Origin: Euprymna scolopes
Taxonomy: Eukaryota
Reading direction: 5' to 3' (one strand)
Length of the DNA: 64,000 nt
Assembly: GCA_053919585.1 (NCBI GenBank)
Contig: CM132826.1
Positions within the stretch are counted from its first letter, which is position 1. Each line of letters opens with the position of its first letter. The position numbers were made by a program, and so were the translations under genes. The notes beneath the pieces are model-generated. The model made no database searches. It was not told the DNA's origin and saw only the letters and a program-made list of their open reading frames with translations. Below, in pieces: positions 1,101 through 63,803 of this stretch.

Positions 1101-1246
1101 TGTGTTTCGTTAAATATCTTCTTTGTGGATTCCGACTGATTAACACCTGCTAAGACATTTTGGATGTAAGTAAAATACTCCTGCTGCAAAAGACTCAGAT
1201 TGCCTTTTCTGATTAAAGATTGCAGGTTTGTAGGTAATTTTGTCAA
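1101..1246 (-). CDS. Coding exon D (LTKLPTNLQSLIRKGNLSLLQQEYFTYIQNVLAGVNQSESTKKIFNET-)
   Basis: Acceptor tttgtttttgctttcAG and donor GTAAGT. 146 bp; only the phase-0 frame is open, matching exon C; ends in phase 2. Confidence 0.85.
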
Positions 1247-7188: not shown

Positions 7189-7230
<42 letters not shown>

Positions 7231-7354: not shown

Positions 7355-7409
<55 letters not shown>

Positions 7410-9100: not shown

Positions 9101-9338
9101 TACAAACAAACATACATACATACATACATACATACACACCGATTTTTGCCTTTTATATATATAGATGTTTTACAGTTTTGTATACTATTCAGACGAAATA
9201 TATTTATTTGAAAGACAAAGTTACTTTAAAACGCAAACATTTAGTAACATTTGGTGGTGAGCCGTATGAATTCTTTTGATGGGCCACATACAGATTGTGA
9301 GCAATAGTTTGGCCACACCATGTCTAAACGATGCTTAC

Positions 9339-9491
9339 CTGTAGTAGTTCACGTGCCTGTTGGTATCCCTCTGTTAGCAGATCACTCTCACATATTAAAC
9401 TATGAACTTGGTTCATTGCAGATAATTCGGGGCCATCATTGTAAGAGGAGATCAATTTGCACAAAATTGATTTCAAGTGGATGCCAATCAC
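9339..9491 (-). CDS. Coding exon C (VIGIHLKSILCKLISSYNDGPELSAMNQVHSLICESDLLTEGYQQARELLQ)
   Basis: Acceptor ctatttttttcgtAG and donor CAG|GTAAGC. 153 bp, open in phase 0/0; an island of complex sequence among repeats. Confidence 0.85.
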
Positions 9492-9494
9492 CTA

Positions 9495-11650: not shown

Positions 11651-11680
11651 AGTCTTTCTAATCGCAATAAAACTTTTTAC

Positions 11681-11802
11681 CTGGAATGGATCCTGAGTAA
11701 TGGCTTTGTAGATGTCAAAGTTTTGTTGATTGAGTAGATGTTTCATGATTCGGTCGAGATTTTCTGATCCAGAGAAAATATCCGGGAGCATTGCTGTAAT
11801 AT
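11681..11802 (-). CDS. Coding exon B (D-ITAMLPDIFSGSENLDRIMKHLLNQQNFDIYKAITQDPFQ)
   Basis: Acceptor ttgttttttgtttAG and donor CAG|GTAAAA. 122 bp, phase 1 to 0, inside ORF-track 11579..11791. Confidence 0.8.
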
Positions 11803-11999
11803 CTAAACAAAAAACAATGCAAATGATAGAGCTGTGTGCGAGATGACGTCACGGCAAGGAGAAAGGAAAAAGATTATACAAAAAGAATGACGTGCGTAGA
11901 ACGATGATTAGATCAGAGAAGGGTGTATTCGACAGGTATTCTGAAAATCATGTCAGAGAAGGACAGAGACAGACATGTTATGCACGGTAGCTGATAGTA

Positions 12000-14900
12000 T
12001 GGAAATTGAGCTTTCTGTATTTTTTTAAAGAGAAAATATCCGAGAACATTGCTGAAATAACTAAACGAAAAAACAATAACCTTGAATGATTGGAAATTGG
12101 GCTTTCTGTATTTTTTTTAAAGAGAAAATATCCGAGAACATTGCTGAAATAACTAAACGAAAAAACAATAACCTTGAATGATTGGAAATTGAGCTTTCTG
12201 TATTTTTTTTTAAAGAGAAAATATCCGAGAACATTGCTGAAATAACTAAACGAAAAAACAATAACCTTGAATGATTGGAAATTGGGCTTTCTGTATTTTT
12301 TTTTTAAAAGAGAAAATATCCGAGAACATTGCTGAAATAACTAAACGAAAAAACAATAACCTTGAATGATTGGAAATTGGGCTTTCTGTATTTTTTTTTA
12401 AAGAGAAAATATCCGAGAACATTGCCGAAATAACTAAACGAAAAAACAATAACCTTGAATGATTGGAAATTGGGCTTTCTGTATTTTTTTTTAAAGAGAA
12501 AATATCCGAGAACATTGCTGAAATAACTAAACGAAAAAACAATAACCTTGAATGATTGGAAATTGGGCTTTCTGTATTTTTTTTTAAAGAGAAAATATCC
12601 GAGAACATTGCTGAAATAACTAAACGAAAAAACAATAACCTTGAATGATTGGAAATTGAGCTTTCTGTATTTTTTTTAAAAGAGAAAATATCCGAGAACA
12701 TTGCTGAAATAACTAAACGAAAAAACAATAACCTTGAATGATTGGAAATTGGGCTTTCTGTATTTTTTTAAAAAAGAGAAAATATCCGAGAACATTGCTG
12801 AAATAACTAAACGAAAAAACAATAACCTTGAATGATTGGAAATTGGGCTTTCTGTATTTTTTTTAAAGAGAAAATATCCGAGAACATTGCTGAAATAACT
12901 AAACGAAAAAACAATAACCTTGAATGATTGGAAATTGAGCTTTCTGTATTTTTTTTTAAAGAGAAAATATCCGAGAACATTGCTGAAATAACTAAACGAA
13001 AAAACAATAACCTTGAATGATTGGAAATTGAGCTTTCTGTATTTTTTTTTAAAGAGAAAATATCCGAGAACATTGCTGAAATAACTAAACGAAAAAACAA
13101 TAACCTTGAATGATTGGAAATTGGGCTTTCTGTATTTTTTTTTAAAAGAGAAAATATCCGAGAACATTGCTGAAATAACTAAACGAAAAAACAATAACCT
13201 TGAATGATTGGAAATTGGGCTTTCTGTATTTTTTTTAAAGAGAAAATATCCGAGAACATTGCTGAAATAACTAAACGAAAAAACAATAACCTTGAATGAT
13301 TGGAAATTGGGCTTTCTGTATTTTTTTTTAAAGAGAAAATATCCGAGAACATTGCTGATATAACTAAACGAAAAAACAATAACCTTGAATGATTGGAAAT
13401 TGAGCTTTCTGTATTTTTTTTTACAGAGAAAATATCCGAGAACATTGCTGAAATAACTAAACGAAAAAACAATAACCTTGAATGATTGGAAATTGGGCTT
13501 TCTGTATTTTTTTTTTAAAAGAGAAAATATCCGAGAACATTGCTGAAATAACTAAACGAAAAAACAATAACCTTGAATGATTGGAAATTGGGCTTTCTGT
13601 ATTTTTTTTAAAGAGAAAATATCCGAGAACATTGCTGAAATAACTAAACGAAAAAACAATAACCTTGAATGATTGGAAATTGAGCTTTCTGTATTTTTTT
13701 TTAAAGAGAAAATATCCGAGAACATTGCTGAAATAACTAAACGAAAAAACAATAACCTTGAATGATTGGAAATTGAGCTTTCTGTATTTTTTTTTAAAGA
13801 GAAAATATCCGAGAACATTGCTGAAATAACTAAACGAAAAAACAATAACCTTGAATGATTGGAAATTGGGCTTTCTGTATTTTTTTTTTAAAAGAGAAAA
13901 TATCCGAGAACATTGCTGAAATAACTAAACGAAAAAACAATAACCTTGAATGATTGGAAATTGAGCTTTCTGTATTTTTTTTTAAAGAGAAAATATCCGA
14001 GAACATTGCTGAAATAACTAAACGAAAAAACAATAACCTTGAATGATTGGAAATTGGGCTTTCTGTATTTTTTTTTTTAAAGAGAAAATATCCGAGAACA
14101 TTGCTGAAATAACTAAACGAAAAAACAATAACCTTGAATGATTGGAAATTGAGCTTTCTGTATTTTTTTTTAAAGAGAAAATATCCGAGAACATTGCTGA
14201 AATAACTAAACGAAAAAACAATAACCTTGAATGATTGGAAATTGGGCTTTCTGTATTTTTTTTTTAAAAGAGAAAATATCCGAGAACATTGCTGAAATAA
14301 CTAAACGAAAAAACAATAACCTTGAATGATTGGAAATTGAGCTTTCTGTATTTTTTTTTAAAGAGAAAATATCCGAGAACATTGCTGAAATAACTAAACG
14401 AAAAAACAATAACCTTGAATGATTGGAAATTGGGCTTTCTGTATTTTTTTTTTAAAAGAGAAAATATCCGAGAACATTGCTGAAATAACTAAACGAAAAA
14501 ACAATAACCTTGAATGATAGGAAATTGAGCTTTCTGTATTTTTTTTTAAAGAGAAAATATCCGAGAACATTGCTGAAATAACTAAACGAAAAAACAATAA
14601 TCTTGAATGATTGGAAATTGGGCTTTCTGTATTTTTTTTTAAAGAGAAAATATCCGAGAACATTGCTGAAATAACTAAACGAAAAAACAATAATCTTGAA
14701 TGATTGGAAATTGGGCTTTCTGTATTTTTTTTTAAAGAGAAAATATCCGAGAACATTGCTGAAATAACTAAACGAAAAAACAATAACCTTGAATGATTGG
14801 AAATTGAGCTTTCTGTATTTTTTTTTACAGCGAGAAAATATCCGAGAACATTGCTGAAATAACTAAACGAAAAAACAATAACCTTGAATGATTGGAAATT

Positions 14901-17900
14901 GGTCTTTCTGTATTTTTTTTTTAAAAGAGAAAATATCCGAGAACATTGCTGAAATAACTAAACGAAAAAACAATAACCTTGAATGATTGGAAATTGAGCT
15001 TTCTGTATTTTTTTTTAAAGAGAAAATATCCGAGAACATTGCTGAAATAACTAAACGAAAAAACAATAACCTTGAATGATTGGAAATTGAGCTTTCTGTA
15101 TTTTTTTTTAAAGAGAAAATATCCGAGAACATTGCTGAAATAACTAAACGAAAAAACAATAACCTTGAATGATTGGAAATTGGCTTTCTGTATTTTTTTA
15201 AAGAGAAAATATCCGAGAACATTGCTGAAATAACTAAACGAAAAAACAATAACCTTGAATGATTGGAAATTGGGCTTTCTGTATTTTTTTTTAAAGAGAA
15301 AATATCCGAGAACATTGCTGAAATAACTAAAAGAAAAAACAATAACCTTGAATGATTGGAAATTGAGCTTTCTGTATTTTTTTTTAAAGAGAAAATATCC
15401 GAGAACATTGCTGAAATAACTAAACGAAAAAACAATAACCTTGAATGATTGGAAATTCAGCTTTCTGTATTTTTTTTAAAAGAGAAAATATCCGAGAACA
15501 TTGCTGAAATAACTAAACGAAAAAACAATAACCTTGAATGATTGGAAAATGAGCTTTCTGTATTTTTTTTTAAAAGAGAAAATATCCGAGAACATTGCTG
15601 AAATAACTAAACGAAAAAACAATAACCTTGAATGATTGGAAATTGAGCTTTCTGTATTTTTTTTTAAAAGAGAAAATATCCAGGAACAATGCTGAAATAA
15701 CTAAACGAAAAAACAATAACCTTAAATGATTGGAAATTGAGCTTTCTGTATTTTTTTTTAAAAGAGAAAATATCCGAGAACATTGCTGAAATAACTAAAC
15801 GAAAAAACAATAACCTTAAATGATTGGAAATTGAGCTTTCTGTATTTTTTTTTTAAAAGAGAAAATATCCGAGAACATTGCTGAAATAACTAAACGAAAA
15901 AACAATAACCTTGAATGATTGGAAATTGAGCTTTCTGTATTTTTTTTTTAAAGAGAAAATATCCGAGAACATTGCTGAAATAACTAAACGAAAAAACAAT
16001 AACCTTGAATGATTGGAAATTGAGCTTTCTGTATTTTTTTTTAAAGAGAAAATATCCGAGAACATTGCTGAAATAACTAAACGAAAAAACAATAATCTTG
16101 AATGATTGGAAATTGGGCTTTCTGTATTTTTTTTTAAAGAGAAAATATCCGAGAACATTGCTGAAATAACTAAACGAAAAAACAATAACCTTGAATGATT
16201 GGAAATTGGGCTTTCTGTATTTTTTTTTAAAGAGAAAATATCCGAGAACATTGCTGAAATAACTAAACGAAAAAACAATAACCTTGAATGATTGGAAATT
16301 GGGCTTTCTGTATTTTTTTTTAAAGAGAAAATATCCGAGAACATTGCTGAAATAACTAAACGAAAAAACAATAACCTTGAATGATTGGAAATTGGGCTTT
16401 CTGTATTTTTTTTTAAAGAGAAAATATCCGAGAACATTGCTGAAATAACTAAACGAAAAAACAATAACCTTGAATGATTGGAAATTGAGCTTTCTGTATT
16501 TTTTTTTAAAAGAGAAAATATCCGAGAACATTGCTGAAATAACTAAACGAAAAAACAATAACCTTGAATGATTGGAAATTGAGCTTTCTGTATTTTTTTT
16601 TACTGAGAAAATATCCGAGAACATTGCTGAAATAACTAAACGAAAAAACAATAACCTTGAATGATTGGAAATTGGGCTTTCTGTATTTTTTTTTTAAAAG
16701 AGAAAATATCCGAGAACATTGCTGAAATAACTAAACGAAAAAACAATAACCTTGAATGATTGGAAATTGGGCTTTCTGTATTTTTTTTTAAAAGAGAAAA
16801 TATCCGAGAACATTGCTGAAATAACTAAACGAAAAAACAATAACCTTGAATGATTGGAAATTGGGCTTTCTGTATTTTTTTTTTAAAAGAGAAAATATCC
16901 GAGAACATTGCTGAAATAACTAAACGAAAAAACAATAACCTTGAATGATTGGAAATTGGGCTTTCTGTATTTTTTTTTTAAAAGAGAAAATATCCGAGAA
17001 CATTGCTGAAATAACTAAACGAAAAAACAATAACCTTGAATGATTGGAAATTGGCTTTCTGTATTTTTTTTAAAGAGAAAATATCCGAGAACATTGCTGA
17101 AATAACTAAACGAAAAAACAATAACCTTGAATGATTGGAAATTGAGCTTTCTGTATTTTTTTTTAAAGAGAAAATATCCGAGAACATTGCTGAAATAACT
17201 AAACGAAAAAACAATTACCTTGAATGATTGAAAATTGGTCTTTCTGTATTTTTTTTTAAAGAGAAAATATCCGAGAACATTGCTGAAATAACTAAACGAA
17301 AAAACAATAACCTTCAATGATTGGAAATTGGGCTTTCTGTATTTTTTTTTTAAAAGAGAAAATATCCGAGAACATTGCTGAAATAACTAAACGAAAAAAC
17401 AATAACCTTGAATGATTGGAAATTGGGCTTTCTGTATTTTTTTTTTAAAAGAGAAAATATCCGAGAACATTGCTGAAATAACTAAACGAAAAAACAATAA
17501 CCTTGAATGATTGGAAATTGGGCTTTCTGTATTTTTTTTTTAAAAGAGAAAATATCCGAGAACATTGCTGAAATAACTAAACGAAAAAACAATAACCTTG
17601 AATGATTGGAAATTGGGCTTTCTGTATTTTTTTTTTAAAAGAGAAAATATCCGAGAACATTGCTGAAATAACTAAACGAAAAAACAATAACCTTGAATGA
17701 TTGGAAATTGGCTTTCTGTATTTTTTTTAAAGAGAAAATATCCGAGAACATTGCTGAAATAACTAAACGAAAAAACAATAACCTTGAATGATTGGAAATT
17801 GGGCTTTCTGTATTTTTTTTTAAAGAGAAAATATCCGAGAACATTGCTGAAATAACTAAACGAAAAAACAATAACCTTGAATGATTGGAAATTGAGCTTT

Positions 17901-20900
17901 CTGTATTTTTTTTTAAAGAGAAAATATCCGAGAACATTGCTGAAATAACTAAACGAAAAAACAATAACCTTGAATGATTGGAAATTGAGCTTTCTGTATT
18001 TTTTTTTAAAGAGAAAATATCCGAGAACATTGCTGAAATAACTAAACGAAAAAACAATAACCTTGAATGATTGGAAATTGAGCTTTCTGTATTTTTTTTT
18101 TAAAAGAGAAAATATCCGAGAACATTGCTGAAATAACTAAACGAAAAAACAATAACCTTGAATGATTGGAAATTGGCTTTCTGTATTTTTTTTAAAGAGA
18201 AAATATCCGAGAACATTGCTGAAATAACTAAACGAAAAAACAATAACCTTGAATGATTGGAAATTGAGCTTTCTGTATTTTTTTTTTAAAAGAGAAAATA
18301 TCCGAGAACATTGCTGAAATAACTAAACGAAAAAACAATAACCTTGAATGATTGGAAATTGGGCTTTCTGTATTTTTTTTAAAGAGAAAATATCCGAGAA
18401 CATTGCTGAAATAACTAAACGAAAAAACAATAACCTTGAATGATTGGAAATTGGCTTTCTGTATTTTTTTTAAAGAGAAAATATCCGAGAACATTGCTGA
18501 AATAACTAAACGAAAAAACAATAACCTTGAATGATTGGAAATTCAGCTTTCTGTATTTTTTTTTAAAGAGAAAATATCCGAGAACATTGCTGAAATAACT
18601 AAACGAAAAAACAATAACCTTGAATGATTGGAAATTGAGCTTTCTGTATTTTTTTTTTAAAAGAGAAAATATCCGAGAACATTGCTGAAATAACTAAACG
18701 AAAAAACAATAATCTTGAATGATTGGAAATTGAGCTTTCTGTATTTTTTTTAAAGAGAAAATATCCGAGAACATTGCTGAAATAACTAAACGAAAAAACA
18801 ATAATCTTGAATGATTGGAAATTGAGCTTTCTGTATTTTTTTTTAAAAGAGAAAATATCCGAGAACATTGCTGAAATAACTAAACGAAAAAACAATAATC
18901 TTGAATGATTGGAAATTGAGCTTTCTGTATTTTTTTTTTAAAGAGAAAATATCCGAGAACATTGCTGAAATAACTAAACGAAAAAACAATAATCTTGAAT
19001 GATTGGAAATTGAGCTTTCTGTATTTTTTTAAAGAGAAAATATCCGAGAACATTGCTGAAATAACTAAACGAAAAAACAATAACCTTGAATGATTGGAAA
19101 TTGAGCTTTCTGTATTTTTTTTTTAAAAGAGAAAATATCCGAGAACATTGCTGAAATAACTAAACGAAAAAACAATAACCTTGAATGATTGGAAATTGAG
19201 CTTTCTGTATTTTTTTTTTAAAGAGAAAATATCCGAGAACATTGCTGAAATAACTAAACGAAAAAACAATAATCTTGAATGATTGGAAATTGAGCTTTCT
19301 GTATTTTTTTTTAAAGAGAAAATATCCGAGAACATTGCTGAAATAACTAAACGAAAAAACAATAACCTTGAATGATGGGAAATTGAGCTTTCTGTATTTT
19401 TTTTTAAAAGAGAAAATATCCGAGAACATTGCTGAAATAACTAAACGAAAAAACAATAACCTTGAATGATTGGAAATTGGGCTTTCTGTATTTTTTTTTT
19501 AAAAGAGAAAATATCCGAGAACATTGCTGAAATAACTAAACGAAAAAACAATAACCTTGAATGATTGGAAATTGAGCTTTCTGTATTTTTTTTTAAAGAG
19601 AAAATATCCGAGAACATTGCTGAAATAACTAAACGAAAAAACAATAATCTTGAATGATTGGAAATTGGGCTTTCTGTATTTTTTTTTAAAGAGAAAATAT
19701 CCGAGAACATTGCTGAAATAACTAAACGAAAAAACAATAACCTTGAATGATTGGAAATTGGGCTTTCTGTATTTTTTTTTAAAAGAGAAAATATCCGAGA
19801 ACATTGCTGAAATAACTAAACGAAAAAACAATAACCTTGAATGATTGGAAATTGGCTTTCTGTATTTTTTTTAAAGAGAAAATATCCGAAAACATTGCTG
19901 AAATAACTAAACGAAAAAACAATAACCTTGAATGATTGGAAATTGAGCTTTCTGTATTTTTTTTTAAAGAGAAAATATCCGAGAACATTGCTGAAATAAC
20001 TAAACGAAAAAACAATAACCTTGAATGATTGGAAATTGGGCTTTCTGTATTTTTTTTTAAAGAGAAAATATCCGAGAACATTGCTGAAATAACTAAACGA
20101 AAAAACAATAACCTTGAATGATTGGAAATTGGGCTTTCTGTATTTTTTTAAAGAGAAAATATCCGAGAACATTGCTGAAATAACTAAACGAAAAAACAAT
20201 AACCTTGAATGATTGGAAATTGGGCTTTCTGTATTTTTTTTTAAAGAGAAAATATCCGAGAACATTGCTGAAATAACTAAACGAAAAAACAATTACCTTG
20301 AATGATTGAAAATTGGCTTTCTGTATTTTTTTTAAAGAGAAAATATCCGAGAACATTGCTGAAATAACTAAACGAAAAAACAATAACCTTGAATGATTGG
20401 AAATTGGGCTTTCTGTATTTTTTTTAAAGAGAAAATATCCGAGAACATTGCTGAAATAACTAAACGAAAAAACAATAACCTTGAATGATTGGAAATTGAG
20501 CTTTCTGTATTTTTTTTAAAGAGAAAATATCCGAGAACATTGCTGAAATAACTAAACGAAAAACAATAACCTTGAATGATTGGAAATTGAGCTTTCTGTA
20601 TTTTTTTTTAAAGAGAAAATATCCGAGAACATTGCTGAAATAACTAAACGAAAAAACAATAACCTTGAATGATTGGAAATTGGGCTTTCTGTATTTTTTT
20701 TTAAAGAGAAAATATCCGAGAACATTGCTGAAATAACTAAACGAAAAAAACAATAACCTTGAATGATTGGAAATTAGCTTTCTGTATTTTTTTTAAAGAG
20801 AAAATATCCGAGAACATTGCTGAAATAACTAAACGAAAAAACAATAACCTTGAATGATTGGAAATTGGGCTTTCTGTATTTTTTTTTAAAGAGAAAATAT

Positions 20901-50900: not shown

Positions 50901-53900
50901 TATCCGAGAACATTGCTGAAATAACTAAACGAAAAAACAATAACCTTGAATGATTGGAAATTTGGCTTTCTGTATTTTTTTTAAAAGAGAAAATATCCGA
51001 GAACATTGCTGAAATAACTAAACGAAAAAACAATAACCTTGAATGATTGGAAATTTGGCTTTCTGTATTTTTTTTAAAGAGAAAATATCCGAGAACATTG
51101 CTGAAATAACTAAACGAAAAAACAATAACCTTGAATGATTGGAAATTGGGCTTTCTGTATTTTTTTTAAAAGAGAAAATATCCGAGAACATTGCTGAAAT
51201 AACTAAACGAAAAAACAATAACCTTGAATGATTGGAAATTGGGCTTTCTGTATTTTTTTTAAAAGAGAAAATATCCGAGAACATTGCTGAAATAACTAAA
51301 CGAAAAAACAATAACCTTGAATGATTGGAAATTGGGCTTTCTGTATTTTTTTTAAAAGAGAAAATATCCGAGAACATTGCTGAAATAACTAAACGAAAAA
51401 ACAATAACCTTGAATGATTGGAAATTGGGCTTTCTGTATTTTTTTTTTAAAGAGAAAATATCCGAGAACATTGCTGAAATAACTAAACGAAAAAACAATA
51501 ACCTTGAATGATTGGAAATTTGGCTTTCTGTATTTTTTTTTTAAAAGAGAAAATATCCGAGAACATTGCTGAAATAACTAAACGAAAAAACAATAACCTT
51601 GAATGATTGGAAATTTGGCTTTCTGTATTTTTTTTAAAAGAGAAAATATCCGAGAACATTGCTGAAATAACTAAACGAAAAAACAATAACCTTGAATGAT
51701 TGGAAATTGGGCTTTCTGTATTTTTTTTAAAAGAGAAAATATCCGAGAACATTGCTGAAATAACTAAACAAAAAAACAATAACCTTGAATGATTGGAAAT
51801 TGGGCTTTCTGTATTTTTTTTTAAAGAGAAAATATCCGAGAACATTGCTGAAATAACTAAACGAAAAAACAATAACCTTGAATGATTGGAAATTGGGCTT
51901 TCTGTATTTCTTTTTAAAGAGAAAATATCCGAGAACATTGCTGAAATAACTAAACGAAAAAACAATAACCTTGAATGATTGGAAATTGGTCTTTCTGTAT
52001 TTTTTTTTTAAAGAGAAAATATCCGAGAACATTGCTGAAATAACTAAACGAAAAAACAATAACCTTGAATGATTGGAAATTGGGCTTTCTGTATTTTTTT
52101 TTTAAAAGAGAAAATATCCGAGAACATTGCTGAAATAACTAAACGAAAAAACAATAACCTTGAATGATTGGAAATTTGGCTTTCTGTATTTTTTTTAAAA
52201 GAGAAAATATCCGAGAACATTGCTGAAATAACTAAACGAAAAAACAATAACCTTGAATGATTGGAAATTTGGCTTTCTGTATTTTTTTTAAAAGAGAAAA
52301 TATCCGAGAACATTGCTGAAATAACTAAACGAAAAAACAATAACCTTGAATGATTGGAAATTTGGCTTTCTGTATTTTTTTTAAAGAGAAAATATCCGAG
52401 AACATTGCTGAAATAACTAAACGAAAAAACAATAACCTTGAATGATTGGAAATTGGGCTTTCTGTATTTTTTTTAAAAGAGAAAATATCCGAGAACATTG
52501 CTGAAATAACTAAACGAAAAAACAATAACCTTGAATGATTGGAAATTGGGCTTTCTGTATTTTTTTTAAAAGAGAAAATATCCGAGAACATTGCTGAAAT
52601 AACTAAACGAAAAAACAATAACCTTGAATGATTGGAAATTGGGCTTTCTGTATTTTTTTTTTAAAAGAGAAAATATCCGAGAACATTGCTGAAATAACTA
52701 AACGAAAAAACAATAACCTTGAATGATTGGAAATTTGGCTTTCTGTATTTTTTTTAAAAGAGAAAATATCCGAGAACATTGCTGAAATAACTAAACGAAA
52801 AAACAATAACCTTGAATGATTGGAAATTGGGCTTTCTGTATTTTTTTTAAAAGAGAAAATATCCGAGAACATTGCTGAAATAACTAAACGAAAAAACAAT
52901 TACCTTGAATGATTGGAAATTGGTCTTTCTGTATTTTTTTTTTAAAGAGAAAATATCCGAGAACATTGCTGAAATAACTAAACGAAAAAACAATAACCTT
53001 GAATGATTGGAAATTGAGCTTTCTGTATTTTTTTTTTTAAAAAGAAAATATCCGAGAACATTGCTGAAATAACTAAACGAAAAAACAATTACCTTGAATG
53101 ATTGGAAATTGGTCTTTCTGTATTTTTTTTTTTAAAGAGAAAATATCCGAGAACATTGCTGAAATAACTAAACGAAAAAACAATAACCTTGAATGATTGG
53201 AAATTGGGCTTTCTGTATTTTTTTTTTAAAAGAGAAAATATCCGAGAACATTGCTGAAATAACTAAACGAAAAAACAATAACCTTGAATGATTGGAAATT
53301 GGGCTTTCTGTATTTTTTTTTAAAGAGAAAATATCCGAGAACATTGCTGAAATAACTAAACGAAAAAACAATAACCTTGAATGATTGGAAATTTGGCTTT
53401 CTGTATTTTTTTTTTTAAAGAGAAAATATCCGAGAACATTGCTGAAATAACTAAACGAAAAAACAATTACCTTGAATGATTGGAAATTGAATTTTCCGTA
53501 TTTTTTTTTAAAGAGAAAATATCCGAGAACATTGCTTAAATAACTAAACGAAAAAACAATAACCTTGAATGATTGGAAATTTGGCTTTCTGTATTTTTTT
53601 TAAAAGAGAAAATATCCGAGAACATTGCTGAAATAACTAAACGAAAAAACAATAACCTTGAATGATTGGAAATTGAGCTTTCTGTATTTTTTTTAAAAGA
53701 GAAAATATCCGAGAACATTGCTGAAATAACTAAACGAAAAAACAATAACCTTGAATGATTGGAAATTGGGCTTTCTGTATTTTTTTTAAAAGAGAAAATA
53801 TCCGAGAACATTGCTGAAATAACTAAACGAAAAAACAATTACCTTGAATGATTGGAAATTGGTCTTTCTGTATTTTTTTTTTTAAAGAGAAAATATCCGA

Positions 53901-56900
53901 GAACATTGCTGAAATAACTAAACGAAAAAACAATAACCTTGAATGATTGGAAATTGGGCTTTCTGTATTTTTTTTTTAAAAGAGAAAATATCCGAGAACA
54001 TTGCTGAAATAACTAAACGAAAAAACAATAACCTTGAATGATTGGAAATTTGGCTTTCTGTATTTTTTTTAAAAGAGAAAATATCCGAGAACATTGCTGA
54101 AATAACTAAACGAAAAAACAATAACCTTGAATGATTGGAAATTTGGCTTTCTGTATTTTTTTTTTTAAAGAGAAAATATCCGAGAACATTGCTGAAATAA
54201 CTACACGAAAAAACAATAACCTTGAATGATTGGAAATTGAGCTTTCTGTATTTTTTTTAAAGAGAAAATATCCGAGAACATTGCTGAAATAACTAAACGA
54301 AAAAACAATAACCTTGAATGATTGGAAATTGGGCTTTCTGTATTTTTTTTTAAAGAGAAAATATCCGAGAACATTGCTGAAATAACTAAACGAAAAAACA
54401 ATAACCTTGAATGATTGGAAATTCAGCTTTCTGTATTTTTTTTTAAAAGAGAAAATATCCGAGAACATTGCTGAAATAACTACACGAAAAAACAATAACC
54501 TTGAATGATTGGAAATTGGGCTTTCTGTATTTTTTTTTAAAGAGAAAATATCCGAGAACATTGCTGAAATAACTAAACGAAAAAACAATTACCTTGAATG
54601 ATTGGAAATTGAATTTTCCGTATTTTTTTTTAAAGAGAAAATATCCGAGAACATTGCTGAAATAACTAAACGAAAAAAAACAATAACCTTGAATGATTGG
54701 AAATTGGGCTTTCTGTATTTTTTTTTTAAAAGAGAAAATATCCGAGAACATTGCTGAAATAACTAAACGAAAAAACAATAACCTTGAATGATTGGAAATT
54801 GAGCTTTCTGTATTTTTTTTAAAAGAGAAAATATCCGAGAACATTGCTGAAATAACTAAACGAAAAAACAATAACCTTGAATGATTGGAAATTGGGCTTT
54901 CTGTATTTTTTTTAAAAGAGAAAATATCCGAGAACATTGCTGAAATAACTAAACGAAAAAACAATTACCTTGAATGATTGGAAATTGGTCTTTCTGTATT
55001 TTTTTTTTTAAAGAGAAAATATCCGAGAACATTGCTGAAATAACTAAACGAAAAAACAATAACCTTGAATGATTGGAAATTGGGCTTTCTGTATTTTTTT
55101 TTTAAAAGAGAAAATATCCGAGAACATTGCTGAAATAACTAAACGAAAAAACAATAACCTTGAATGATTGGAAATTTGGCTTTCTGTATTTTTTTTAAAA
55201 GAGAAAATATCCGAGAACATTGCTGAAATAACTAAACGAAAAAACAATAACCTTGAATGATTGGAAATTTGGCTTTCTGTATTTTTTTTTTTAAAGAGAA
55301 AATATCCGAGAACATTGCTGAAATAACTACACGAAAAAACAATAACCTTGAATGATTGGAAATTGAGCTTTCTGTATTTTTTTTAAAGAGAAAATATCCG
55401 AGAACATTGCTGAAATAACTAAACGAAAAAACAATAACCTTGAATGATTGGAAATTGGGCTTTCTGTATTTTTTTTTAAAGAGAAAATATCCGAGAACAT
55501 TGCTGAAATAACTAAACGAAAAAACAATAACCTTGAATGATTGGAAATTCAGCTTTCTGTATTTTTTTTTAAAAGAGAAAATATCCGAGAACATTGCTGA
55601 AATAACTACACGAAAAAACAATAACCTTGAATGATTGGAAATTGGGCTTTCTGTATTTTTTTTTAAAGAGAAAATATCCGAGAACATTGCTGAAATAACT
55701 AAACGAAAAAACAATTACCTTGAATGATTGGAAATTGAATTTTCCGTATTTTTTTTTAAAGAGAAAATATCCGAGAACATTGCTGAAATAACTAAACGAA
55801 AAAAAACAATAACCTTGAATGATTGGAAATTGGGCTTTCTGTATTTTTTTTTTAAAAGAGAAAATATCCGAGAACATTGCTGAAATAACTAAACGAAAAA
55901 ACAATAACCTTGAATGATTGGAAATTGGGCTTTCTGTATTTTTTTTTAAAGAGAAAATATCCGAGAACATTGCTGAAATAACTAAACGAAAAAACAATAA
56001 CCTTGAATGATTGGAAATTGAGCTATCTGTATTTTTTTTAAAAGAGAAAATATCCGAGAACATTGCTGAAATAACTAAACGAAAAAACAATAACCTTGAA
56101 TGATTGGAAATTGGGCTTTCTGTATTTTTTTTAAAAGAGAAAATATCCGAGAACATTGCTGAAATAACTAAACGAAAAAACAATTACCTTGAATGATTGG
56201 AAATTGGTCTTTCTGTATTTTTTTTTTAAAGAGAAAATATCCGAGAACATTGCTGAAATAACTAAACGAAAAAACAATAACCTTGAATGATTGGAAATTG
56301 GGCTTTCTGTATTTTTTTTAAAAGAGAAAATATCCGAGAACATTGCTGAAATAACTAAACGAAAAAACAATAACCTTGAATGATTGGAAATTGGGCTTTC
56401 TGTATTTTTTTTTTAAAAGAGAAAATATCCGAGAACATTGCTGAAATAACTAAACGAAAAAACAATAACCTTGAATGATTGGAAATTGGGCTTTCTGTAT
56501 TTTTTTTTAAAGAGAAAATATCCGAGAACATTGCTGAAATAACTAAACGAAAAAACAATAACCTTGAATGATTGGAAATTGAGCTTTCTGTATTTTTTTT
56601 AAAAGAGAAAATATCCGAGAACATTGCTGAAATAACTAAACGAAAAAACAATAACCTTGAATGATTGGAAATTGGGCTTTCTGTATTTTTTTTAAAAGAG
56701 AAAATATCCGAGAACATTGCTGAAATAACTAAACGAAAAAACAATTACCTTGAATGATTGGAAATTGGTCTTTCTGTATTTTTTTTTTTAAAGAGAAAAT
56801 ATCCGAGAACATTGCTGAAATAACTAAACGAAAAAACAATAACCTTGAATGATTGGAAATTGGGCTTTCTGTATTTTTTTTAAAAGAGAAAATATCCGAG

Positions 56901-59900
56901 AACATTGCTGAAATAACTAAACGAAAAAACAATAACCTTGAATGATTGGAAATTGGGCTTTCTGTATTTTTTTTTTAAAAGAGAAAATATCCGAGAACAT
57001 TGCTGAAATAACTAAACGAAAAAACAATAACCTTGAATGATTGGAAATTGGGCTTTCTGTATTTTTTTTTAAAGAGAAAATATCCGAGAACATTGCTGAA
57101 ATAACTAAACGAAAAAACAATAACCTTGAATGATTGGAAATTGAGCTTTCTGTATTTTTTTTAAAAGAGAAAATATCCGAGAACATTGCTGAAATAACTA
57201 AACGAAAAAACAATAACCTTGAATGATTGGAAATTGGGCTTTCTGTATTTTTTTTAAAAGAGAAAATATCCGAGAACATTGCTGAAATAACTAAACGAAA
57301 AAACAATTACCTTGAATGATTGGAAATTGGTCTTTCTGTATTTTTTTTTTTAAAGAGAAAATATCCGAGAACATTGCTGAAATAACTAAACGAAAAAACA
57401 ATAACCTTGAATGATTGGAAATTGGGCTTTCTGTATTTTTTTTAAAAGAGAAAATATCCGAGAACATTGCTGAAATAACTAAACGAAAAAACAATAACCT
57501 TGAATGATTGGAAATTGGGCTTTCTGTATTTTTTTTTTAAAAGAGAAAATATCCGAGAACATTGCTGAAATAACTAAACGAAAAAACAATAACCTTGAAT
57601 GATTGGAAATTGGGCTTTCTGTATTTTTTTTTAAAGAGAAAATATCCGAGAACATTGCTGAAATAACTAAACGAAAAAACAATAACCTTGAATGATTGGA
57701 AATTGAGCTTTCTGTATTTTTTTTAAAAGAGAAAATATCCGAGAACATTGCTGAAATAACTAAACGAAAAAACAATAACCTTGAATGATTGGAAATTGGG
57801 CTTTCTGTATTTTTTTTAAAAGAGAAAATATCCGAGAACATTGCTGAAATAACTAAACGAAAAAACAATTACCTTGAATGATTGGAAATTGGTCTTTCTG
57901 TATTTTTTTTTTTAAAGAGAAAATATCCGAGAACATTGCTGAAATAACTAAACGAAAAAACAATAACCTTGAATGATTGGAAATTGGGCTTTCTGTATTT
58001 TTTTTAAAAGAGAAAATATCCGAGAACATTGCTGAAATAACTAAACGAAAAAACAATAACCTTGAATGATTGGAAATTGGGCTTTCTGTATTTTTTTTTT
58101 AAAAGAGAAAATATCCGAGAACATTACTGAAATAACTAAACGAAAAAACAATAACCTTGAATGATTGGAAATTGGGCTTTTTGTATTTTTTTTTAAAGAG
58201 AAAATATCCGAGAACATTGCTGAAATAACTAAACGAAAAAACAATAACCTTGAATGATTGGAAATTGAGCTTTCTGTATTTTTTTTAAAAGAGAAAATAT
58301 CCGAGAACATTGCTGAAATAACTAAACGAAAAAACAATAACCTTGAATGATTGGAAATTGGGCTTTCTGTATTTTTTTTAAAAGAGAAAATATCCGAGAA
58401 CATTGCTGAAATAACTAAACGAAAAAACAATTACCTTGAATGATTGGAAATTGGTCTTTCTGTATTTTTTTTTTTAAAGAGAAAATATCCGAGAACATTG
58501 CTGAAATAACTAAACGAAAAAACAATAACCTTGAATGATCGGAAATTGGGCTTTCTGTATTTTTTTTTTAAAAGAGAAAATATCCGAGAACATTGCTGAA
58601 ATAACTAAACGAAAAAACAATAACCTTGAATGATTGGAAATTTGGCTTTCTGTATTTTTTTTAAAAGAGAAAATATCCGAGAACATTGCTGAAATAACTA
58701 AACGAAAAAACAATAACCTTGAATGATTGGAAATTTGGCTTTCTGTATTTTTTTTTTTAAAGAGAAAATATCCGAGAACATTGCTGAAATAACTACACGA
58801 AAAAACAATAACCTTGAATGATTGGAAATTGAGCTTTCTGTATTTTTTTTAAAGAGAAAATATCCGAGAACATTGCTGAAATAACTAAACGAAAAAACAA
58901 TAACCTTGAATGATTGGAAATTGGGCTTTCTGTATTTTTTTTTAAAGAGAAAATATCCGAGAACATTGCTGAAATAACTAAACGAAAAAACAATAACCTT
59001 GAATGATTGGAAATTCAGCTTTCTGTATTTTTTTTTAAAAGAGAAAATATCCGAGAACATTGCTGAAATAACTACACGAAAAAACAATAACCTTGAATGA
59101 TTGGAAATTGGGCTTTCTGTATTTTTTTTTAAAGAGAAAATATCCGAGAACATTGCTGAAATAACTAAACGAAAAAACAATAACCTTGAATGATTGGAAA
59201 TTGAGCTTTCTGTATTTTTTTTAAAGAGAAAATATCCGAGAACATTGCTGAAATAACTAAACGAAAAAACAATAACCTTGAATGATTGGAAATTGGGCTT
59301 TCTGTATTTTTTTTTAAAGAGAAAATATCCGAGAACATTGCTGAAATAACTAAACGAAAAAACAATAACCTTGAATGATTGGAAATTCAGCTTTCTGTAT
59401 TTTTTTTAAAGAGAAAATATCCGAGAACATTGCTGAAATAACTACACGAAAAAACAATAACCTTGAATGATTGGAAATTGAGCTGTCTGTATTTTTTTTT
59501 AAAGAGAAAATATCCGAGAACATTGCTGAAATAACTAAACGAAAAAACAATTACCTTGAATGATTGGAAATTGAATTTTCCGTATTTTTTTTTAAAGAGA
59601 AAATATCCGAGAACATTGCTGAAATAACTAAACGAAAAAACAATAACCTTGAATGATTGGAAATTGGGCTTTCTGTATTTTTTTTTTAAAAGAGAAAATA
59701 TCCGAGAACATTGCTGAAATAACTAAACGAAAAAACAATAACCTTGAATGATTGGAAATTGGGCTTTCTGTATTTTTTTTTTTAAAGAGAAAATATCCGA
59801 GAACATTGCTGAAATAACTAAACGAAAAAACAATAACCTTGAATGATTGGAAATTGAGCTTTCTGTATTTTTTTTTTTAAAGAGAAAATATCCGAGAACA

Positions 59901-62660
59901 TTGCTGAAATAACTAAACGAAAAAACAATTACCTTGAATGATTGGAAATTGAATTTTCCGTATTTTTTTTTAAAGAGAAAATATCCGAGAACATTGCTGA
60001 AATAACTAAACGAAAAAACAATAACCTTGAATAATTGGAAATTGGGCTTTCTGTATTTTTTTTTTAAAGAGAAAATATCCGAGAACATTGCTGAAATAAC
60101 TAAACGAAAAAACAATAACCTTGAATGATTGGAAATTGAGCTTTCTGTATTTTTTTTTTAAAGAGAAAATATCCGAGAACATTGCTGAAATAACTAAACG
60201 AAAAAACAATAACCTTGAATGATTGGAAATTGGGCTTTCTGTATTTCTTTTTAAAGAGAAAATATCCGAGAACATTGCTGAAATAACTAAACGAAAAAAC
60301 AATAACCATGAATGATTGGAAATTGAGCTTTCTGTATTTTTTTTTTAAAGAGAAAATATCCGAGAACATTGCTGAAATAACTAAACGAAAAAACAATAAC
60401 CTTGAATGATTGGAAATTGAGCTTTCTGTATTTTTTTAAAAGAGAAAATATCCGAGAACATTGCTGAAATAACTAAACGAAAAAACAATAACCTTGAATG
60501 ATTGGAAATTGAGCTGTCTGTATTTTTTTAAAAGAGAAAATATCCGAGAACATTGCTGAAATAACTAAACGAAAAAACAATAACCTTGAATGATTGGAAA
60601 TTGAGCTTTTTGTATTTTTTTTTAAAGAGAAAATATCCGAGAACATTGCTGAAATAACTAAACGAAAAAACAATAACCTTGAATGATTGGAAATTGGGCT
60701 TTCTGTATTTTTTTTTAAAGAGAAAATATCCGAGAACATTGCTGAAATAACTAAACGAAAAAACAATAACCTTGAATGATTGGAAATTGGGCTTTCTGTA
60801 TTTTTTTTTAAAGAGAAAATATCCGAGAACATTGCTGAAATAACTAAACGAAAAAACAATAACCTTGAATGATTGGAAATTCAGCTTTCTGTATTTTTTT
60901 TTAAAAGAGAAAATATCCGAGAACATTGCTGAAATAACTACACGAAAAAACAATAACCTTGAATGATTGGAAATTGGGCTTTCTGTATTTTTTTTTAAAG
61001 AGAAAATATCCGAGAACATTGCTGAAATAACTAAACGAAAAAACAATAACCTTGAATGATTGGAAATTGAGCTTTCTGTATTTTTTTTAAAGAGAAAATA
61101 TCCGAGAACATTGCTGAAATAACTAAACGAAAAAACAATAACCTTGAATGATTGGAAATTGGGCTTTCTGTATTTTTTTTTAAAGAGAAAATATCCGAGA
61201 ACATTGCTGAAATAACTAAACGAAAAAACAATAACCTTGAATGATTGGAAATTCAGCTTTCTGTATTTTTTTTAAAGAGAAAATATCCGAGAACATTGCT
61301 GAAATAACTACACGAAAAAACAATAACCTTGAATGATTGGAAATTGGGCTTTCTGTATTTTTTTTTAAAGAGAAAATATCCGAGAACATTGCTGAAATAA
61401 CTAAACGAAAAAACAATTACCTTGAATGATTGGAAATTGAATTTTCCGTATTTTTTTTTAAAGAGAAAATATCCGAGAACATTGCTGAAATAACTAAACG
61501 AAAAAACAATAACCTTGAATGATTGGAAATTGGGCTTTCTGTATTTTTTTTTTAAAAGAGAAAATATCCGAGAACATTGCTGAAATAACTAAACGAAAAA
61601 ACAATAACCTTGAATGATTGGAAATTGGGCTTTCTGTATTTTTTTTTTTAAAGAGAAAATATCCGAGAACATTGCTGAAATAACTAAACGAAAAAACAAT
61701 AACCTTGAATGATTGGAAATTGAGCTTTCTGTATTTTTTTTTTAAAGAGAAAATATCCGAGAACATTGCTGAAATAACTAAACGAAAAAACAATTACCTT
61801 GAATGATTGGAAATTGAATTTTCCGTATTTTTTTTTAAAGAGAAAATATCCGAGAACATTGCTGAAATAACTAAACGAAAAAACAATAACCTTGAATGAT
61901 TGGAAATTGGGCTTTCTGTATTTTTTTTTTAAAGAGAAAATATCCGAGAACATTGCTGAAATAACTAAACGAAAAAACAATAACCTTGAATGATTGGAAA
62001 TTGAGCTTTCTGTATTTTTTTTTTAAAGAGAAAATATCCGAGAACATTGCTGAAATAACTAAACGAAAAAACAATAACCTTGAATGATTGGAAATTGGGC
62101 TTTCTGTATTTCTTTTTAAAGAGAAAATATCCGAGAACATTGCTGAAATAACTAAACGAAAAAACAATAACCATGAATGATTGGAAATTGAGCTTTCTGT
62201 ATTTTTTTTTTAAAGAGAAAATATCCGAGAACATTGCTGAAATAACTAAACGAAAAAACAATAACCTTGAATGATTGGAAATTGAGCTTTCTGTATTTTT
62301 TTAAAAGAGAAAATATCCGAGAACATTGCTGAAATAACTAAACGAAAAAACAATAACCTTGAATGATTGGAAATTGAGCTGTCTGTATTTTTTTAAAAGA
62401 GAAAATATCCGAGAACATTGCTGAAATAACTAAACGAAAAAACAATAACCTTGAATGATTGGAAATTGAGCTTTTTGTATTTTTTTTTAAAGAGAAAATA
62501 TCCGAGAACATTGCTGAAATAACTAAACGAAAAAACAATAACCTTGAATGATTGGAAATTGGGCTTTCTGTATTTTTTTTTAAAGAGAAAATATCCGAAA
62601 ACATTGCCGAAATAACTAAACGAAAAAACAATAACCTTGAATGATTGGAAATTGAGCTTT
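12000..62660. repeat. Satellite array, ~540 monomers of 92-95 bp (consensus GGAAATTGRGCTTTCTGTA T8-11 AAA(A)GAGAAAATATCCGAGAACATTGCTGAAATAACTAAACGAAAAAACAATAACCTTGAATGATT)
   Basis: Directly visible uninterrupted head-to-tail repeats. Length varies mostly in the T/A tract. Copy number is span divided by ~93.4. Confidence 0.99.
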
Positions 62661-63109
62661 TTTAAAAAATTTTTTTATATCCATCTGTCCTAGGTAGAAA
62701 GTACTGTTGGAGAGCTAAATGTTTTGGTTTCGATTTTAGCTGATGGCACCCAAGGCGTACATATTTTTAAAAAAAACTTTTCAAATCAGCGTTTAGGAAC
62801 CTCTACAGTGATAGATCAAATGGTAATATTTGAAATGGCTTTAGAATCCAGTCTACCCTACTATTTAGTTTTTAGTTTGAAAGAAGATAAATTCATACTT
62901 TTGACCTGGGTATTAAATGAAAGTGATTGGGGTTTCCTTCTATTATATATGCGCTGCAGCCGATTGTCAAATGTGTTCTTCAGGCTATTTAATTTTAAAA
63001 AATTATTTAATTTTTAAAAATCAACCTTTCTGATTGTCTCGATATATACACTTGTTGGCAATAATAAAACATACACAGCTGGTTATAAAAATATTTTGTT
63101 TATTCTTAT

Positions 63110-63330
63110 TCTTAGAACTACACGCCTGTGGAACTCTGTTCCGTCTGCCTGCTTCCCTCCTGACTACAACATCGATGTCTTCAAGTCCAACGTAAACAAA
63201 TTCCTGATGAACCGCCCCCTTAAGTAGACACTTTAAATATCCTCACTAACGTACTGTACTTACAATAACCCTTATCCCCGAGTGGCTTCCGGGCCTTGAT
63301 AAGTGTTAACCACCTTGTAAAAAAAAAAAA
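63110..63330 (+). mobile_element. 5'-truncated non-LTR retrotransposon (CR1/Jockey-like) 3' end with poly(A) tail
   Basis: Translates as LRTTRLWNSVPSACFPPDYNIDVFKSNVNKFLMNRPLK*, the RLWNxLP..FP..Y....FK motif typical of LINE ORF2 C-termini. Followed by a ~90 nt UTR and an A-run at ~63319-63331. Confidence 0.85.
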
Positions 63331-63344
63331 ATAAAATAAAATAA

Positions 63345-63520
63345 CATTTTCGGTTTCTGAATAACAGTTTTGACATTAGTGATGGCGTGCGTGGCGGAGG
63401 TGTCGTGTGGAGAAGAATGTGTTGCTTAGCTAACCTGTCGTAGTTGCTCTCCTTTTTCTTTGTTGTCTGTCATCTCTTTTATCGGCCCAGACGACGTCAA
63501 CAATCATGCAGTATTTTAAA
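63345..63520 (-). pseudogene. Possible highly degraded mariner transposase fragment
   Basis: With frameshifts the minus strand gives RR...G*LSN / ILLH / HDTSATHAITNVKTVIQK, loosely like the ILLHDNARPH region. Confidence 0.3.
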
Positions 63521-63744
63521 AATGTGGGGTCAATCTCACTGATTCTACGTCCTATATCTTGACCTCCTTTGATGTCAGAATCTGGGGCCCCCAGGCTTCC
63601 GATTAACTTTTCTTTGATCTCACTCGCCGGGGATCTGGATTATCCAACACTTTTGGACTAGTATCACTATCAAAGTCTGCTAGTCCTGACTACCCTACTA
63701 TTTTAATCATAGAGTATGTGGCTTTTACTTCTCTTTATACTCAC

Positions 63745-63803
63745 CACTGTCATTTGCTGATGAGAGCAGAAGATTTGACAACAAATTTTGTATCATGGCT
63801 GAG
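63745..63803 (-). CDS. Internal coding exon A of an unidentified host gene (x-SAMIQNLLSNLLLSSANDS-G)
   Basis: Acceptor cttttctattttcAG and donor GTGAGT. 59 bp, open, ends in phase 1, which matches the start of exon 11681-11802 (G+AT = Asp). Confidence 0.75.

What the first reader, a model, noticed from the sequence alone, without database searches (positions are those of the whole stretch)
11745..62660. 50-kb satellite whose monomer is a copy of the host intron's own 3' splice site and exon start (~540 decoy acceptors)
Seen: 11771-11818 aligns to the monomer at 44 of 49 columns. On the minus strand the real site is attgtttttt-gtttAG|ATATTACAGCAATGCTCCCGGATATTTTCTCT and the monomer is attgttttttcgtttAG|TTATTTCAGCAATGTTCTCGGATATTTTCTCT (ITAMLPDIFS vs ISAMFSDIFS). 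Weaker similarity continues on both sides (ATGATT..GAG.TTTCTG; AATGAT..GAGCT). The array is in sense orientation, ends ~200 nt upstream of the true acceptor, and keeps the U-tract and AG in essentially every copy. Inference: the satellite arose from an intron-exon junction, and the spliceosome must skip or use hundreds of near-cognate acceptors. Possible roles are stepwise removal of the giant intron, a splicing-factor sink, or a length-tunable expression brake.
Basis: partly seen in the sequence, partly recalled or inferred. Interest (0 to 1): 0.9.

Follow-up and report, generated by a model that had tools for sequence, protein, structure and literature searches.

The report
Young intronic satellite carrying splice-acceptor look-alikes
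A 50-kb tandem repeat fills an expressed mollusc gene's intron, and half of each 93-bp unit is an old copy of the nearby splice acceptor and exon start; the cell splices correctly past all ~540 look-alikes, and the array looks like a recent, probably neutral expansion rather than a splicing device.

Summary
The core observation holds. A 93-bp satellite of 542 copies (12000-62660) fills 97.5% of a 51,942-nt intron. It lies in sense orientation and ends 197 nt upstream of the acceptor. Monomer positions 14-62 match the acceptor plus the first 32 nt of exon 2 at 44 of 49 columns (score 71; shuffles 18±2.4). The claimed weaker similarity on both sides is at chance level, so only half the monomer is junction-like.

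RNA contigs join exon 1 (donor 63745) directly to 11802, and also join exon 2 to 3 and exon 3 to 4. The exon and the giant intron are therefore real. No exon-1-to-monomer junction was seen. Satellite RNA depth is about 3 summed over 542 copies, against about 100 for the exons.

A sister species (organism B, DNA) and another (organism C, RNA) carry exon 2 almost unchanged. B holds the spacer and the terminal monomer in one single-copy-depth contig and shows no array. Satellite words occur only in organism A runs. The array is therefore younger than the exon. It was amplified from a pre-existing intronic seed that holds an older (about 10% diverged) paralogue of the junction.

Monomers are about 99% uniform at every position, and the AG is no better protected than other sites. 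Recursive-splicing and decoy-exon criteria fail. The scan has noted many other large intronic satellites in this genome. Interest is modest.

The parts
12000..62660 (-). 93-bp satellite, 542 copies, 50,661 bp, sense orientation in intron 1. Each unit carries ATTGTTTTTTCGTTTAG|TTATTTCAG...
   Evidence: TRF; segmentation and alignment of 541 monomers, about 99% per-column identity; multi-monomer block duplications and no edge gradient.
62661..62697 (-). Degenerate partial unit at the distal (5') edge of the array: GGATAT, then an A/T run, then GCTCAATTTCCA.
   Evidence: Read directly from the sequence; not tested statistically.
11771..11818 (-). 49-column homology core. It covers the last 15 nt of intron 1 (pyrimidine tract plus AG at 11804-11803) and the first 32 nt of exon 2, and is paralogous to monomer positions 14-62.
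   Evidence: Local alignment 44/49, score 71 against shuffles 18.2±2.4; flanks at chance.
11681..11802 (-). Exon 2 (122 nt), encoding (D)ITAMLPDIFSGSENLDRIMKHLLNQQNFDIYKAITQDPFQ.
   Evidence: RNA contigs X2 and X19 cover 11679-11803 and 11679-11800. The joint to exon 3 is 9489/11679 CT..AC. The loose end at 11803 equals the end of exon 1. Translation.
11819..11999 (-). 181-bp unique spacer between the array and the acceptor. 11817-11883 is a fragment of a dispersed repeat containing TGACGTCA and ATTTGCAT motifs.
   Evidence: Organism B contig depth is 282-710 over 11849-11861, against 3.5-4.3 for the surroundings. Loose ends lie on both sides at 11817/11844 and 11878/11883.
63745..63803 (-). 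3' part of exon 1, with ATG at 63796-63794 and the donor G|GTGAGT after 63745. The 5' limit of the exon was not determined.
   Evidence: Sequence. The loose end of the RNA contig at 11803 matches 63775-63746 exactly. An in-frame stop lies upstream of the ATG if the exon runs on.
11803..63744 (-). Intron 1, 51,942 nt, GT..AG, 97.5% satellite.
9339..9491 (-). Exon 3 (153 nt).
   Evidence: Joint 9489/11679 in X2 and X19. The loose end at 9339 equals the first 30 nt of exon 4.
1101..1246 (-). Exon 4 (146 nt). The ORF stays open over exons 1-4 (157 codons).
   Evidence: Loose end of X2 contig 2 (4,524 nt) at 9339 matches 1246-1217 exactly.

Best explanation
The array is a young, lineage-specific satellite. 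It formed by tandem amplification of a roughly 93-bp piece of intron 1 that was already present, unexpanded, before organisms A and B split. Growth was by unequal exchange or slippage, and whole multi-monomer blocks were re-duplicated.

About half of that seed (49 bp) is an older local paralogue of the neighbouring 3' splice site plus the first 32 nt of exon 2. As a side effect, every monomer carries a near-cognate acceptor in sense orientation.

The gene is still expressed and spliced normally from donor 63745 to acceptor 11802. By inference, the look-alike acceptors are ignored because they lack what defines an exon: a competent 5' splice site downstream. The monomer offers only AAG|GTTATT, whereas the real exon has CAG|GTAAAA 122 nt on. 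The real exon's remaining 90 nt are also absent from the monomer. The array also lacks poly(A) signals.

Shown: the anatomy, the homology, the correct splicing, the exon's presence in sister species, and the absence of the array signal in organism B.
Inferred: neutrality, the reason the decoys are skipped, and the order 'old 49-bp duplication, then recent amplification'.
For: - Array uniformity of about 99% at nearly all columns, and block duplications of 6 to about 41 monomers, fit recent amplification.
- Satellite 31-mers are held only by organism A runs.
- Organism B DNA has one 270-nt contig at single-copy depth (3.5) running unbroken from the spacer (11842) through the whole terminal monomer to 12108. 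Its depth on 12109-12300 is about 0. A de Bruijn contig could not cross that boundary unbranched if identical monomers were repeated there.
- Exon 2 is nearly identical in B (DNA) and C (RNA), with 1 non-synonymous and 2 synonymous differences.
- The junction and the monomer differ at about 10% of the 49 columns. A and B differ by about 1-3% locally, so the paralogy predates the amplification.
- No monomer retains junction states apart from one C at position 48, so there is no ongoing gene conversion.
- RNA shows exon 1 joined to 11802. Exon depth is 80-105, the unspliced intron 2 contig is at 8.7, and the satellite contig is at about 3 even though its k-mers are shared by 542 copies.
- Singleton variants per column are 0.47 in the acceptor motif, against 0.34-0.77 elsewhere.
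- Other notes of this scan report 15-55-kb satellites in introns of other genes of this genome (unchecked).
Against: - Absence of the array in organism B rests on short-read contigs at low depth, and the tool warns that contigs show presence, not absence. A diverged array in B is not excluded.
- The one raw-read RNA run that was laid had no reads on this gene. Rare use of monomer acceptors was therefore not tested, because contigs drop rare variants.
- The junction-like half of the monomer has somewhat fewer variable columns than the other half (22/49 against 29/44). This could be weak constraint, or simply hitch-hiking of variants by block duplication.
- The direction of the old 49-bp duplication is unresolved. 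No orthologue outside the close relatives could be found.
Confidence: 0.72

Rival explanations
1. Functional decoy array. The roughly 540 acceptor look-alikes bind U2AF/U2 and act as a splicing-factor sink, a kinetic delay or a length-tunable brake on expression. Alternatively, they allow stepwise removal of the giant intron.
For: - There are 512-520 intact pyrimidine-tract-plus-AG motifs in sense orientation, equal in pyrimidine content (14/18) to the real acceptor.
- Satellite words are present in many poly(A)/oligo-dT RNA runs.
- The decoy-exon and intronic-VNTR literature shows that such effects exist elsewhere (PMC6097662, PMC5954066).
Against: - The AG is followed by TT, not GT, so splicing to it cannot regenerate a donor. 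The only AG|GT in the monomer (CAAG|GTTATT) has a poor tract and a poor donor.
- The acceptor motif shows no excess conservation.
- The array appears absent in the sister species, while the gene and exon are conserved.
- No exon-1-to-monomer junction and no intron 1 retention were seen, whereas intron 2 retention is visible in the same run.
- The A9 run in every unit can explain capture by oligo-dT priming (inference).
Confidence: 0.07
2. Exonised satellite. A tandem repeat came first, and its terminal, now diverged, unit was recruited as the acceptor and the first 11 codons of exon 2.
For: - The direction of the 49-bp paralogy is not resolved.
- No distant orthologue of the protein could be found to show that ITAMLPDIFS is ancient.
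- The homology core ends exactly where a dispersed-repeat fragment begins (11817/11818), so upstream homology could have been overwritten.
- In intron 2 a minisatellite unit does supply the pyrimidine tract of the exon 3 acceptor.
Against: - The long array itself is specific to organism A and homogeneous, so it is younger than the exon shared by A, B and C.
- There is no trace of further decayed monomers in the spacer, in exon 2 or in intron 2.
- The ORF is open over four exons, and exon 2 shows mostly synonymous change.
Confidence: 0.15
3. Both the exon start and the monomer core derive independently from a dispersed mobile element.
For: A dispersed repeat abuts the core at 11817-11883. This genome is rich in Helitron-borne tandem repeats, from general knowledge of bivalves (PMC7492417) and from scan notes.
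Against: Organism B depth over 11698-11799 is single-copy (4.28) at a 90% likeness threshold, so the core is not a high-copy family. The core has no other copy in the 13 kb of non-array window.
Confidence: 0.05

Closest known systems
Satellite-filled giant introns of Drosophila Y-linked fertility genes (kl-3, kl-5; PMC6508621)
   Same: A long satellite array lies inside an intron of an expressed gene. It must be transcribed through and removed, and it differs between close species.
   Different: This array is 52 kb, not megabases. Its unit is a complex 93-bp monomer, not a simple repeat. Half of the monomer is a paralogue of the intron's own acceptor and exon start. No dedicated expression programme is known or suggested.
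Decoy exons that promote intron retention (SF3B1 intron 4 and others; PMC6097662, PMC7373989)
   Same: Non-productive splice-site-like sequences lie inside a large intron in sense orientation.
   Different: Decoy exons have both splice sites, are conserved and cause measurable retention. Here only the 3' site is good, the array is not conserved in the sister species, and no retention of intron 1 is seen.
Recursive splice (ratchet) sites in long introns
   Same: A 3' splice-site motif sits deep in a very long intron.
   Different: A ratchet site is AG|GTRAGT. The monomer has TTTAG|TTATTT and TTTCAG|CAATGT. Its only AG|GT is CAAG|GTTATT, behind an A-interrupted tract.
Intronic VNTR near an acceptor that affects splicing (ABCA7 intron 18 VNTR; PMC5954066)
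   Same: A tandem repeat lies in an intron close to the acceptor, with length variation that could in principle modulate splicing.
   Different: No length-to-splicing relation has been tested here. The unit is 93 bp and the array 50 kb, and the monomer holds an exon-derived segment.
De novo satellites amplified from local unique or gene-derived seeds
   Same: The array is species-specific and homogeneous, was expanded in situ from a short seed, and lies inside an intron.
   Different: Here the seed contains a paralogue of a functional splice junction, so every unit is a pseudo-acceptor.

Membership tests
Satellite DNA (tandem, homogeneous, lineage-specific array) | Head-to-tail repeats of a fixed unit in a long array | tested here: met
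   93 bp x 542 copies, 50,661 bp, 97% matches.
Satellite DNA (tandem, homogeneous, lineage-specific array) | High intra-array homogeneity with higher-order or block structure from unequal exchange | tested here: met
   About 99% per-column identity. Repeated variant blocks such as CTCCCC x6 and a duplicated block of about 41 monomers.
Satellite DNA (tandem, homogeneous, lineage-specific array) | Rapid turnover between close species | tested here: met
   Satellite words are held only in organism A runs. Organism B has the terminal unit at single-copy depth and about 0 depth on further units. The absence rests on short-read contigs.
Recursive splicing (ratchet) site | A 3' splice site immediately followed by a regenerated 5' splice site (YnNCAG|GTRAGT) | tested here: not met
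   The monomer AGs at positions 29-30 and 38-39 are followed by TT and CA. The only AG|GT (positions 9-12) is CAAG|GTTATT with a weak tract.
Recursive splicing (ratchet) site | Saw-tooth nascent RNA profile or intermediate junction reads | not testable with these tools
Decoy exon causing intron retention | Cryptic exon with both a 3' and a 5' splice site | tested here: inconclusive
   The 3' site is good. The only candidate donor lies 74 nt downstream and is AAG|GTTATT, with no +5 G and a +3 pyrimidine. It was scored by consensus only.
Decoy exon causing intron retention | Retention of the host intron in polyadenylated RNA | tested here: not met
   In X2 the satellite contig depth is about 3 summed over 542 copies. 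Exon depth is 80-105 and the retained intron 2 contig is at 8.7. This is one run of contigs only.
Decoy exon causing intron retention | Evolutionary conservation of the decoy | tested here: not met
   No array in organism B. The acceptor motif has no excess conservation within the array.
Exonised repeat (repeat older than the exon) | The repeat family is present before, or more widely than, the exon | tested here: not met
   The exon is present in A, B and C. The array is seen in A only. The single-copy seed is as old as the A/B split, so the direction of the 49-bp paralogy stays open.

The most novel reading that the evidence does not exclude
The A-specific expansion has turned intron 1 into a cis-acting kinetic or titration element. 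About 540 U2AF/U2-binding pseudo-acceptors on each nascent transcript would delay or lower productive splicing in proportion to array length. Expression of this gene would then differ between organism A and its array-less sister species, and between alleles of different array length.
Probability: 0.05. Interest if true: 0.7.

Novelty: new member of a known kind. Interest (0 to 1): 0.33.

Why it matters
As it stands, this is a clean natural example of two known processes. One is the birth of a satellite from a short local seed inside an intron. The other is the spliceosome's ability to ignore hundreds of near-perfect 3' splice-site copies, each with 32 nt of exon-like sequence, that it meets before the real acceptor. 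It could serve as a ready-made natural experiment on what, beyond the acceptor core, defines an exon. The sister species without the array offers a natural control for the cost of a 50-kb repetitive intron. It does not currently point to a new mechanism.

Tried and rejected
1. Extended homology beyond the 49-bp core: lenient local alignments of both flanks were at chance.
2. A larger ancestral duplication: spacer against exon 2 remainder plus intron 2, distal flank against spacer, and distal flank against junction were all at chance.
3. A source for the other 44 bp of the monomer elsewhere in the window: none found on either strand.
4. Selective protection of TTTAG: singleton and variant-type counts per column show no depletion relative to the rest. 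The variant-rich columns (84, 85, the A-run) are spread by block duplication.
5. Deep orthologues to date exon 2:
   - Exon 3 against 1.84 billion representative proteins gave only 3 spurious hits to repeat proteins.
   - Pfam found nothing on exons 2-4.
   - The 70-aa ORF over exon 2 shared no words with any of 5.8 billion clusters.
   - The spliced 157-aa protein could not be submitted, because it has no single reference and I did not type it.
6. A metagenome contig scan for the core, allowing either the junction or the monomer state, gave 0 hits.
7. Known oyster satellitome: no 93-bp unit among the 52 C. gigas satDNAs (PMC8268682). The organism is coded, so this is only a side check.
8. Raw RNA reads (X42) to look for rare decoy junctions: no reads on the gene in the 12% of the run that was read.
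9. Rfam: no family on the monomer or the junction.
10. A look-up of the scan's own notes by sequence was blank.


Full report
**What is there**

Tandem Repeats Finder reports a single array at 12000-62660 with period 93, 542.2 copies and 97% matches. Anchoring on a 17-mer gave 542 hits, which bound 541 complete monomers of 90-95 bp. Their alignment shows 97-100% identity at nearly every column. Real variation is confined to the length of an A-run, to position 13 and to positions 82-85.

Variant patterns repeat in blocks. One six-monomer pattern occurs six times in a row, and a block of about 41 monomers is duplicated. Divergence shows no gradient towards the edges. This is the signature of a young array grown by unequal exchange at several scales.

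**The homology**

On the minus strand, window 11818-11771 aligns to monomer positions 14-62 at 44 of 49 columns, with 4 substitutions and a one-base gap. The score is 71, against 18.2±2.4 (maximum 29) for 500 shuffles.

- The segment covers the last 15 nt of the intron (ATTGTTTTTTGTTTAG) and the first 32 nt of exon 2.
The downstream flank scores 7 against 8.7±1.7, and the upstream flank 6 against 6.0±1.2.
- Only about half of the monomer is junction-like. The other 44 bp have no detectable relative in the rest of the window on either strand.
- No larger duplication can be traced. Spacer against intron 2, and distal flank against spacer or junction, are all at chance.

**The gene is real and the giant intron is spliced**

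Contigs of an oligo-dT RNA run (X2) and of an RNA run of another species (X19, organism C) were laid on 9250-12300.

- Both show a joint 9489→11679 (CT..AC on the plus strand, GT..AG in the sense of the gene), which is exon 2 joined to exon 3.
- The X2 contig that covers exon 2 stops at 11803. Its overhang is the exact reverse complement of 63775-63746, the last bases of exon 1.
- The contig that covers exon 3 stops at 9339. Its overhang equals 1246-1217, the start of exon 4.
- Intron 1 is therefore 63744-11803, 51,942 nt, GT..AG, and 97.5% of it is satellite.
- The reading frame is open over exons 1-4 for 157 codons from the ATG at 63796, with an in-frame stop upstream.
- One X2 contig is 4,524 nt long, so the transcript runs on beyond the window.
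- The protein has no Pfam domain in exons 2-4. Exon 3 has no relative among 1.84 billion representative proteins, where the three hits were repeat proteins matched in several weak stretches. The gene cannot be named.

**Age**

- Near-identical 31-mers of the satellite are held only by runs labelled organism A, both DNA and RNA.
- Organism B (DNA contigs, X3) covers 11399-11855 with 3 differences.
- In one unbroken 270-nt contig at single-copy depth (3.5), B also covers 11842-12108. That span is the spacer, the whole terminal monomer and 18 nt of the preceding unit.
- B's depth on the next two monomers of the reference is about 0.
- A de Bruijn contig could not run unbranched from unique spacer through a monomer if identical monomers were repeated, and a 500-copy array would give very deep contigs. 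B therefore most likely has an unexpanded seed.
- The tool warns that contigs show presence, not absence, so a diverged array in B is not excluded.
- Exon 2 in B and C differs from the window at three sites: one non-synonymous (A3S in B) and two synonymous.
- The junction and the monomer core differ by about 10%, several times the local A-B divergence. No monomer keeps junction states, apart from a single C at position 48.

The most economical order of events has two steps. First, an old local duplication placed a 49-bp copy of the junction about 258 bp upstream in the intron. Second, a 93-bp unit containing it was amplified to about 540 copies in the lineage of organism A only. The direction of the first step (junction to intron, or intron to junction) is not resolved.

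**Is there any sign of function?**

- The full 17-nt tract plus AG is intact in 512 of 541 monomers, but so is everything else. Singleton variants per column are 0.47 in the acceptor motif, 0.34 in the exon-like part, 0.77 upstream and 0.50 in the rest. TTTAG is not specially protected.
- The two AGs of the homology core are followed by TT and CA, so ligation of exon 1 to them cannot regenerate a donor. The only AG|GT of the monomer is CAAG|GTTATT, behind an A-interrupted tract. Recursive splicing in the known sense is therefore not supported.
- The decoy-exon model predicts intron retention. In X2 the exons have depth 80-105, and a contig that runs unspliced across the exon 2 donor has 8.7. 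The single satellite contig has about 3, although its k-mers are shared by 542 copies. Intron 1 is thus far less represented than intron 2, and the 8.7 cannot be DNA contamination.
- No exon-1-to-monomer junction appeared. However, contigs drop rare variants, and the one raw-read run laid (X42) had no reads on this gene, so rare decoy use remains untested.
- The A9 run in every unit offers a trivial route into oligo-dT libraries (inference).
- The monomer has no AATAAA or ATTAAA in sense, which fits its being tolerated in a transcribed intron.

**Why the decoys are skipped (inference)**

The real and decoy acceptors have the same pyrimidine content (14 of 18) and the same -3 base. They differ at +1 (A against T). 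The real acceptor is followed at 122 nt by CAG|GTAAAA, and by 90 nt of exon that the monomer lacks. The monomer offers only AAG|GTTATT at 74 nt. Exon definition, an established principle, is enough to explain the choice. A minigene that gives a monomer a good donor would test it.

**Context**

Other notes of this scan (unchecked) list 15-55-kb satellites in introns of several other genes of this genome, including arrays with visible seeds. Large intronic satellites therefore appear common here. In intron 2 of this same gene, a 17-20-bp minisatellite runs right up to the exon 3 acceptor, and its last unit supplies the acceptor's pyrimidine tract. Repeats seeded at or near T-rich acceptor regions may therefore be a local habit rather than a device.

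**Comparison with known systems**

- The closest parallels are the satellite-filled giant introns of Drosophila Y genes (PMC6508621). They share the problem, but at another scale and with another repeat type.
- Decoy exons (PMC6097662, PMC7373989) were considered, and their criteria are not met here.
- Recursive splice sites were considered, and the criterion is not met.
- Intronic VNTRs that affect splicing, such as ABCA7 (PMC5954066), are a further parallel. The effect was not tested here.
- No 93-bp unit is listed in the published Pacific oyster satellitome (PMC8268682). The organism here is coded, so that is only a side check.

**Verdict**

The exon is exonic, and the satellite is not older or more widespread than the exon. 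The functional ideas find no support. The best reading is a recent, probably neutral, species-specific expansion of an intronic seed that happens to contain an old copy of the splice junction.

Noticed in passing
window 7999-8132 (+): Rfam U2 snRNA match at 47 bits, just above the gathering score of 46. It covers the full model length but only 134 nt of DNA, and it lies inside intron 3 on the opposite strand. It is probably a degenerate or partly deleted U2 copy.
   Followed up: partly
window 11817-11883: A fragment of about 35-65 bp immediately upstream of the exon 2 acceptor belongs to a dispersed repeat. It contains TGACGTCA (CRE-like) and ATTTGCAT (octamer-like). Organism B contig depth is 282-710 there, against about 4 for the surroundings. 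RNA reads from another locus match it at 90-95% with loose ends on both sides, and one overhang looks like a second tandem copy of the same element.
   Followed up: partly
window 9492-11140 (-): The intron 2 minisatellites (units of about 17-20 bp, GTAATGCTACTATTTTT-like) run up to the exon 3 acceptor. The last unit (ATAATGCTACTATTTTTTTCGTAG) supplies its pyrimidine tract. Two consecutive introns of this gene thus hold repeats related to their own acceptor regions.
   Followed up: partly
window 11150-11708: An RNA contig of 559 nt (depth 8.7, against about 100 for exon 2) runs unspliced across the exon 2 donor. This suggests about 8% retention of intron 2 in oligo-dT RNA. It cannot be DNA contamination, because the 542-copy satellite has a depth of only about 3 in the same run.
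   Followed up: no
window 12000-62660 (-): The 93-bp unit is 31 codons, and two of its three sense frames have no stop. One of them is the frame homologous to exon 2. Stop-free stretches of up to 350 codons occur in the array, against 71 at most on the other strand. This is expected by chance about once in five for such a unit, but it could mislead gene predictors.
   Followed up: yes
window 11142-11653: Degenerate telomere-like repeats (GGGTTAGTTTA / TTAGGG-like units, with a 247-bp higher period) lie inside intron 2.
   Followed up: no
window 4546-7566: A second tandem family of about 148-200 bp, with embedded (TC)n and (CA)n runs, has about 20 units in intron 3.
   Followed up: no
The 4.5-kb transcript contig implies much more transcript downstream of exon 3 than this model gives, unless the 3' UTR is very long.
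   Followed up: no
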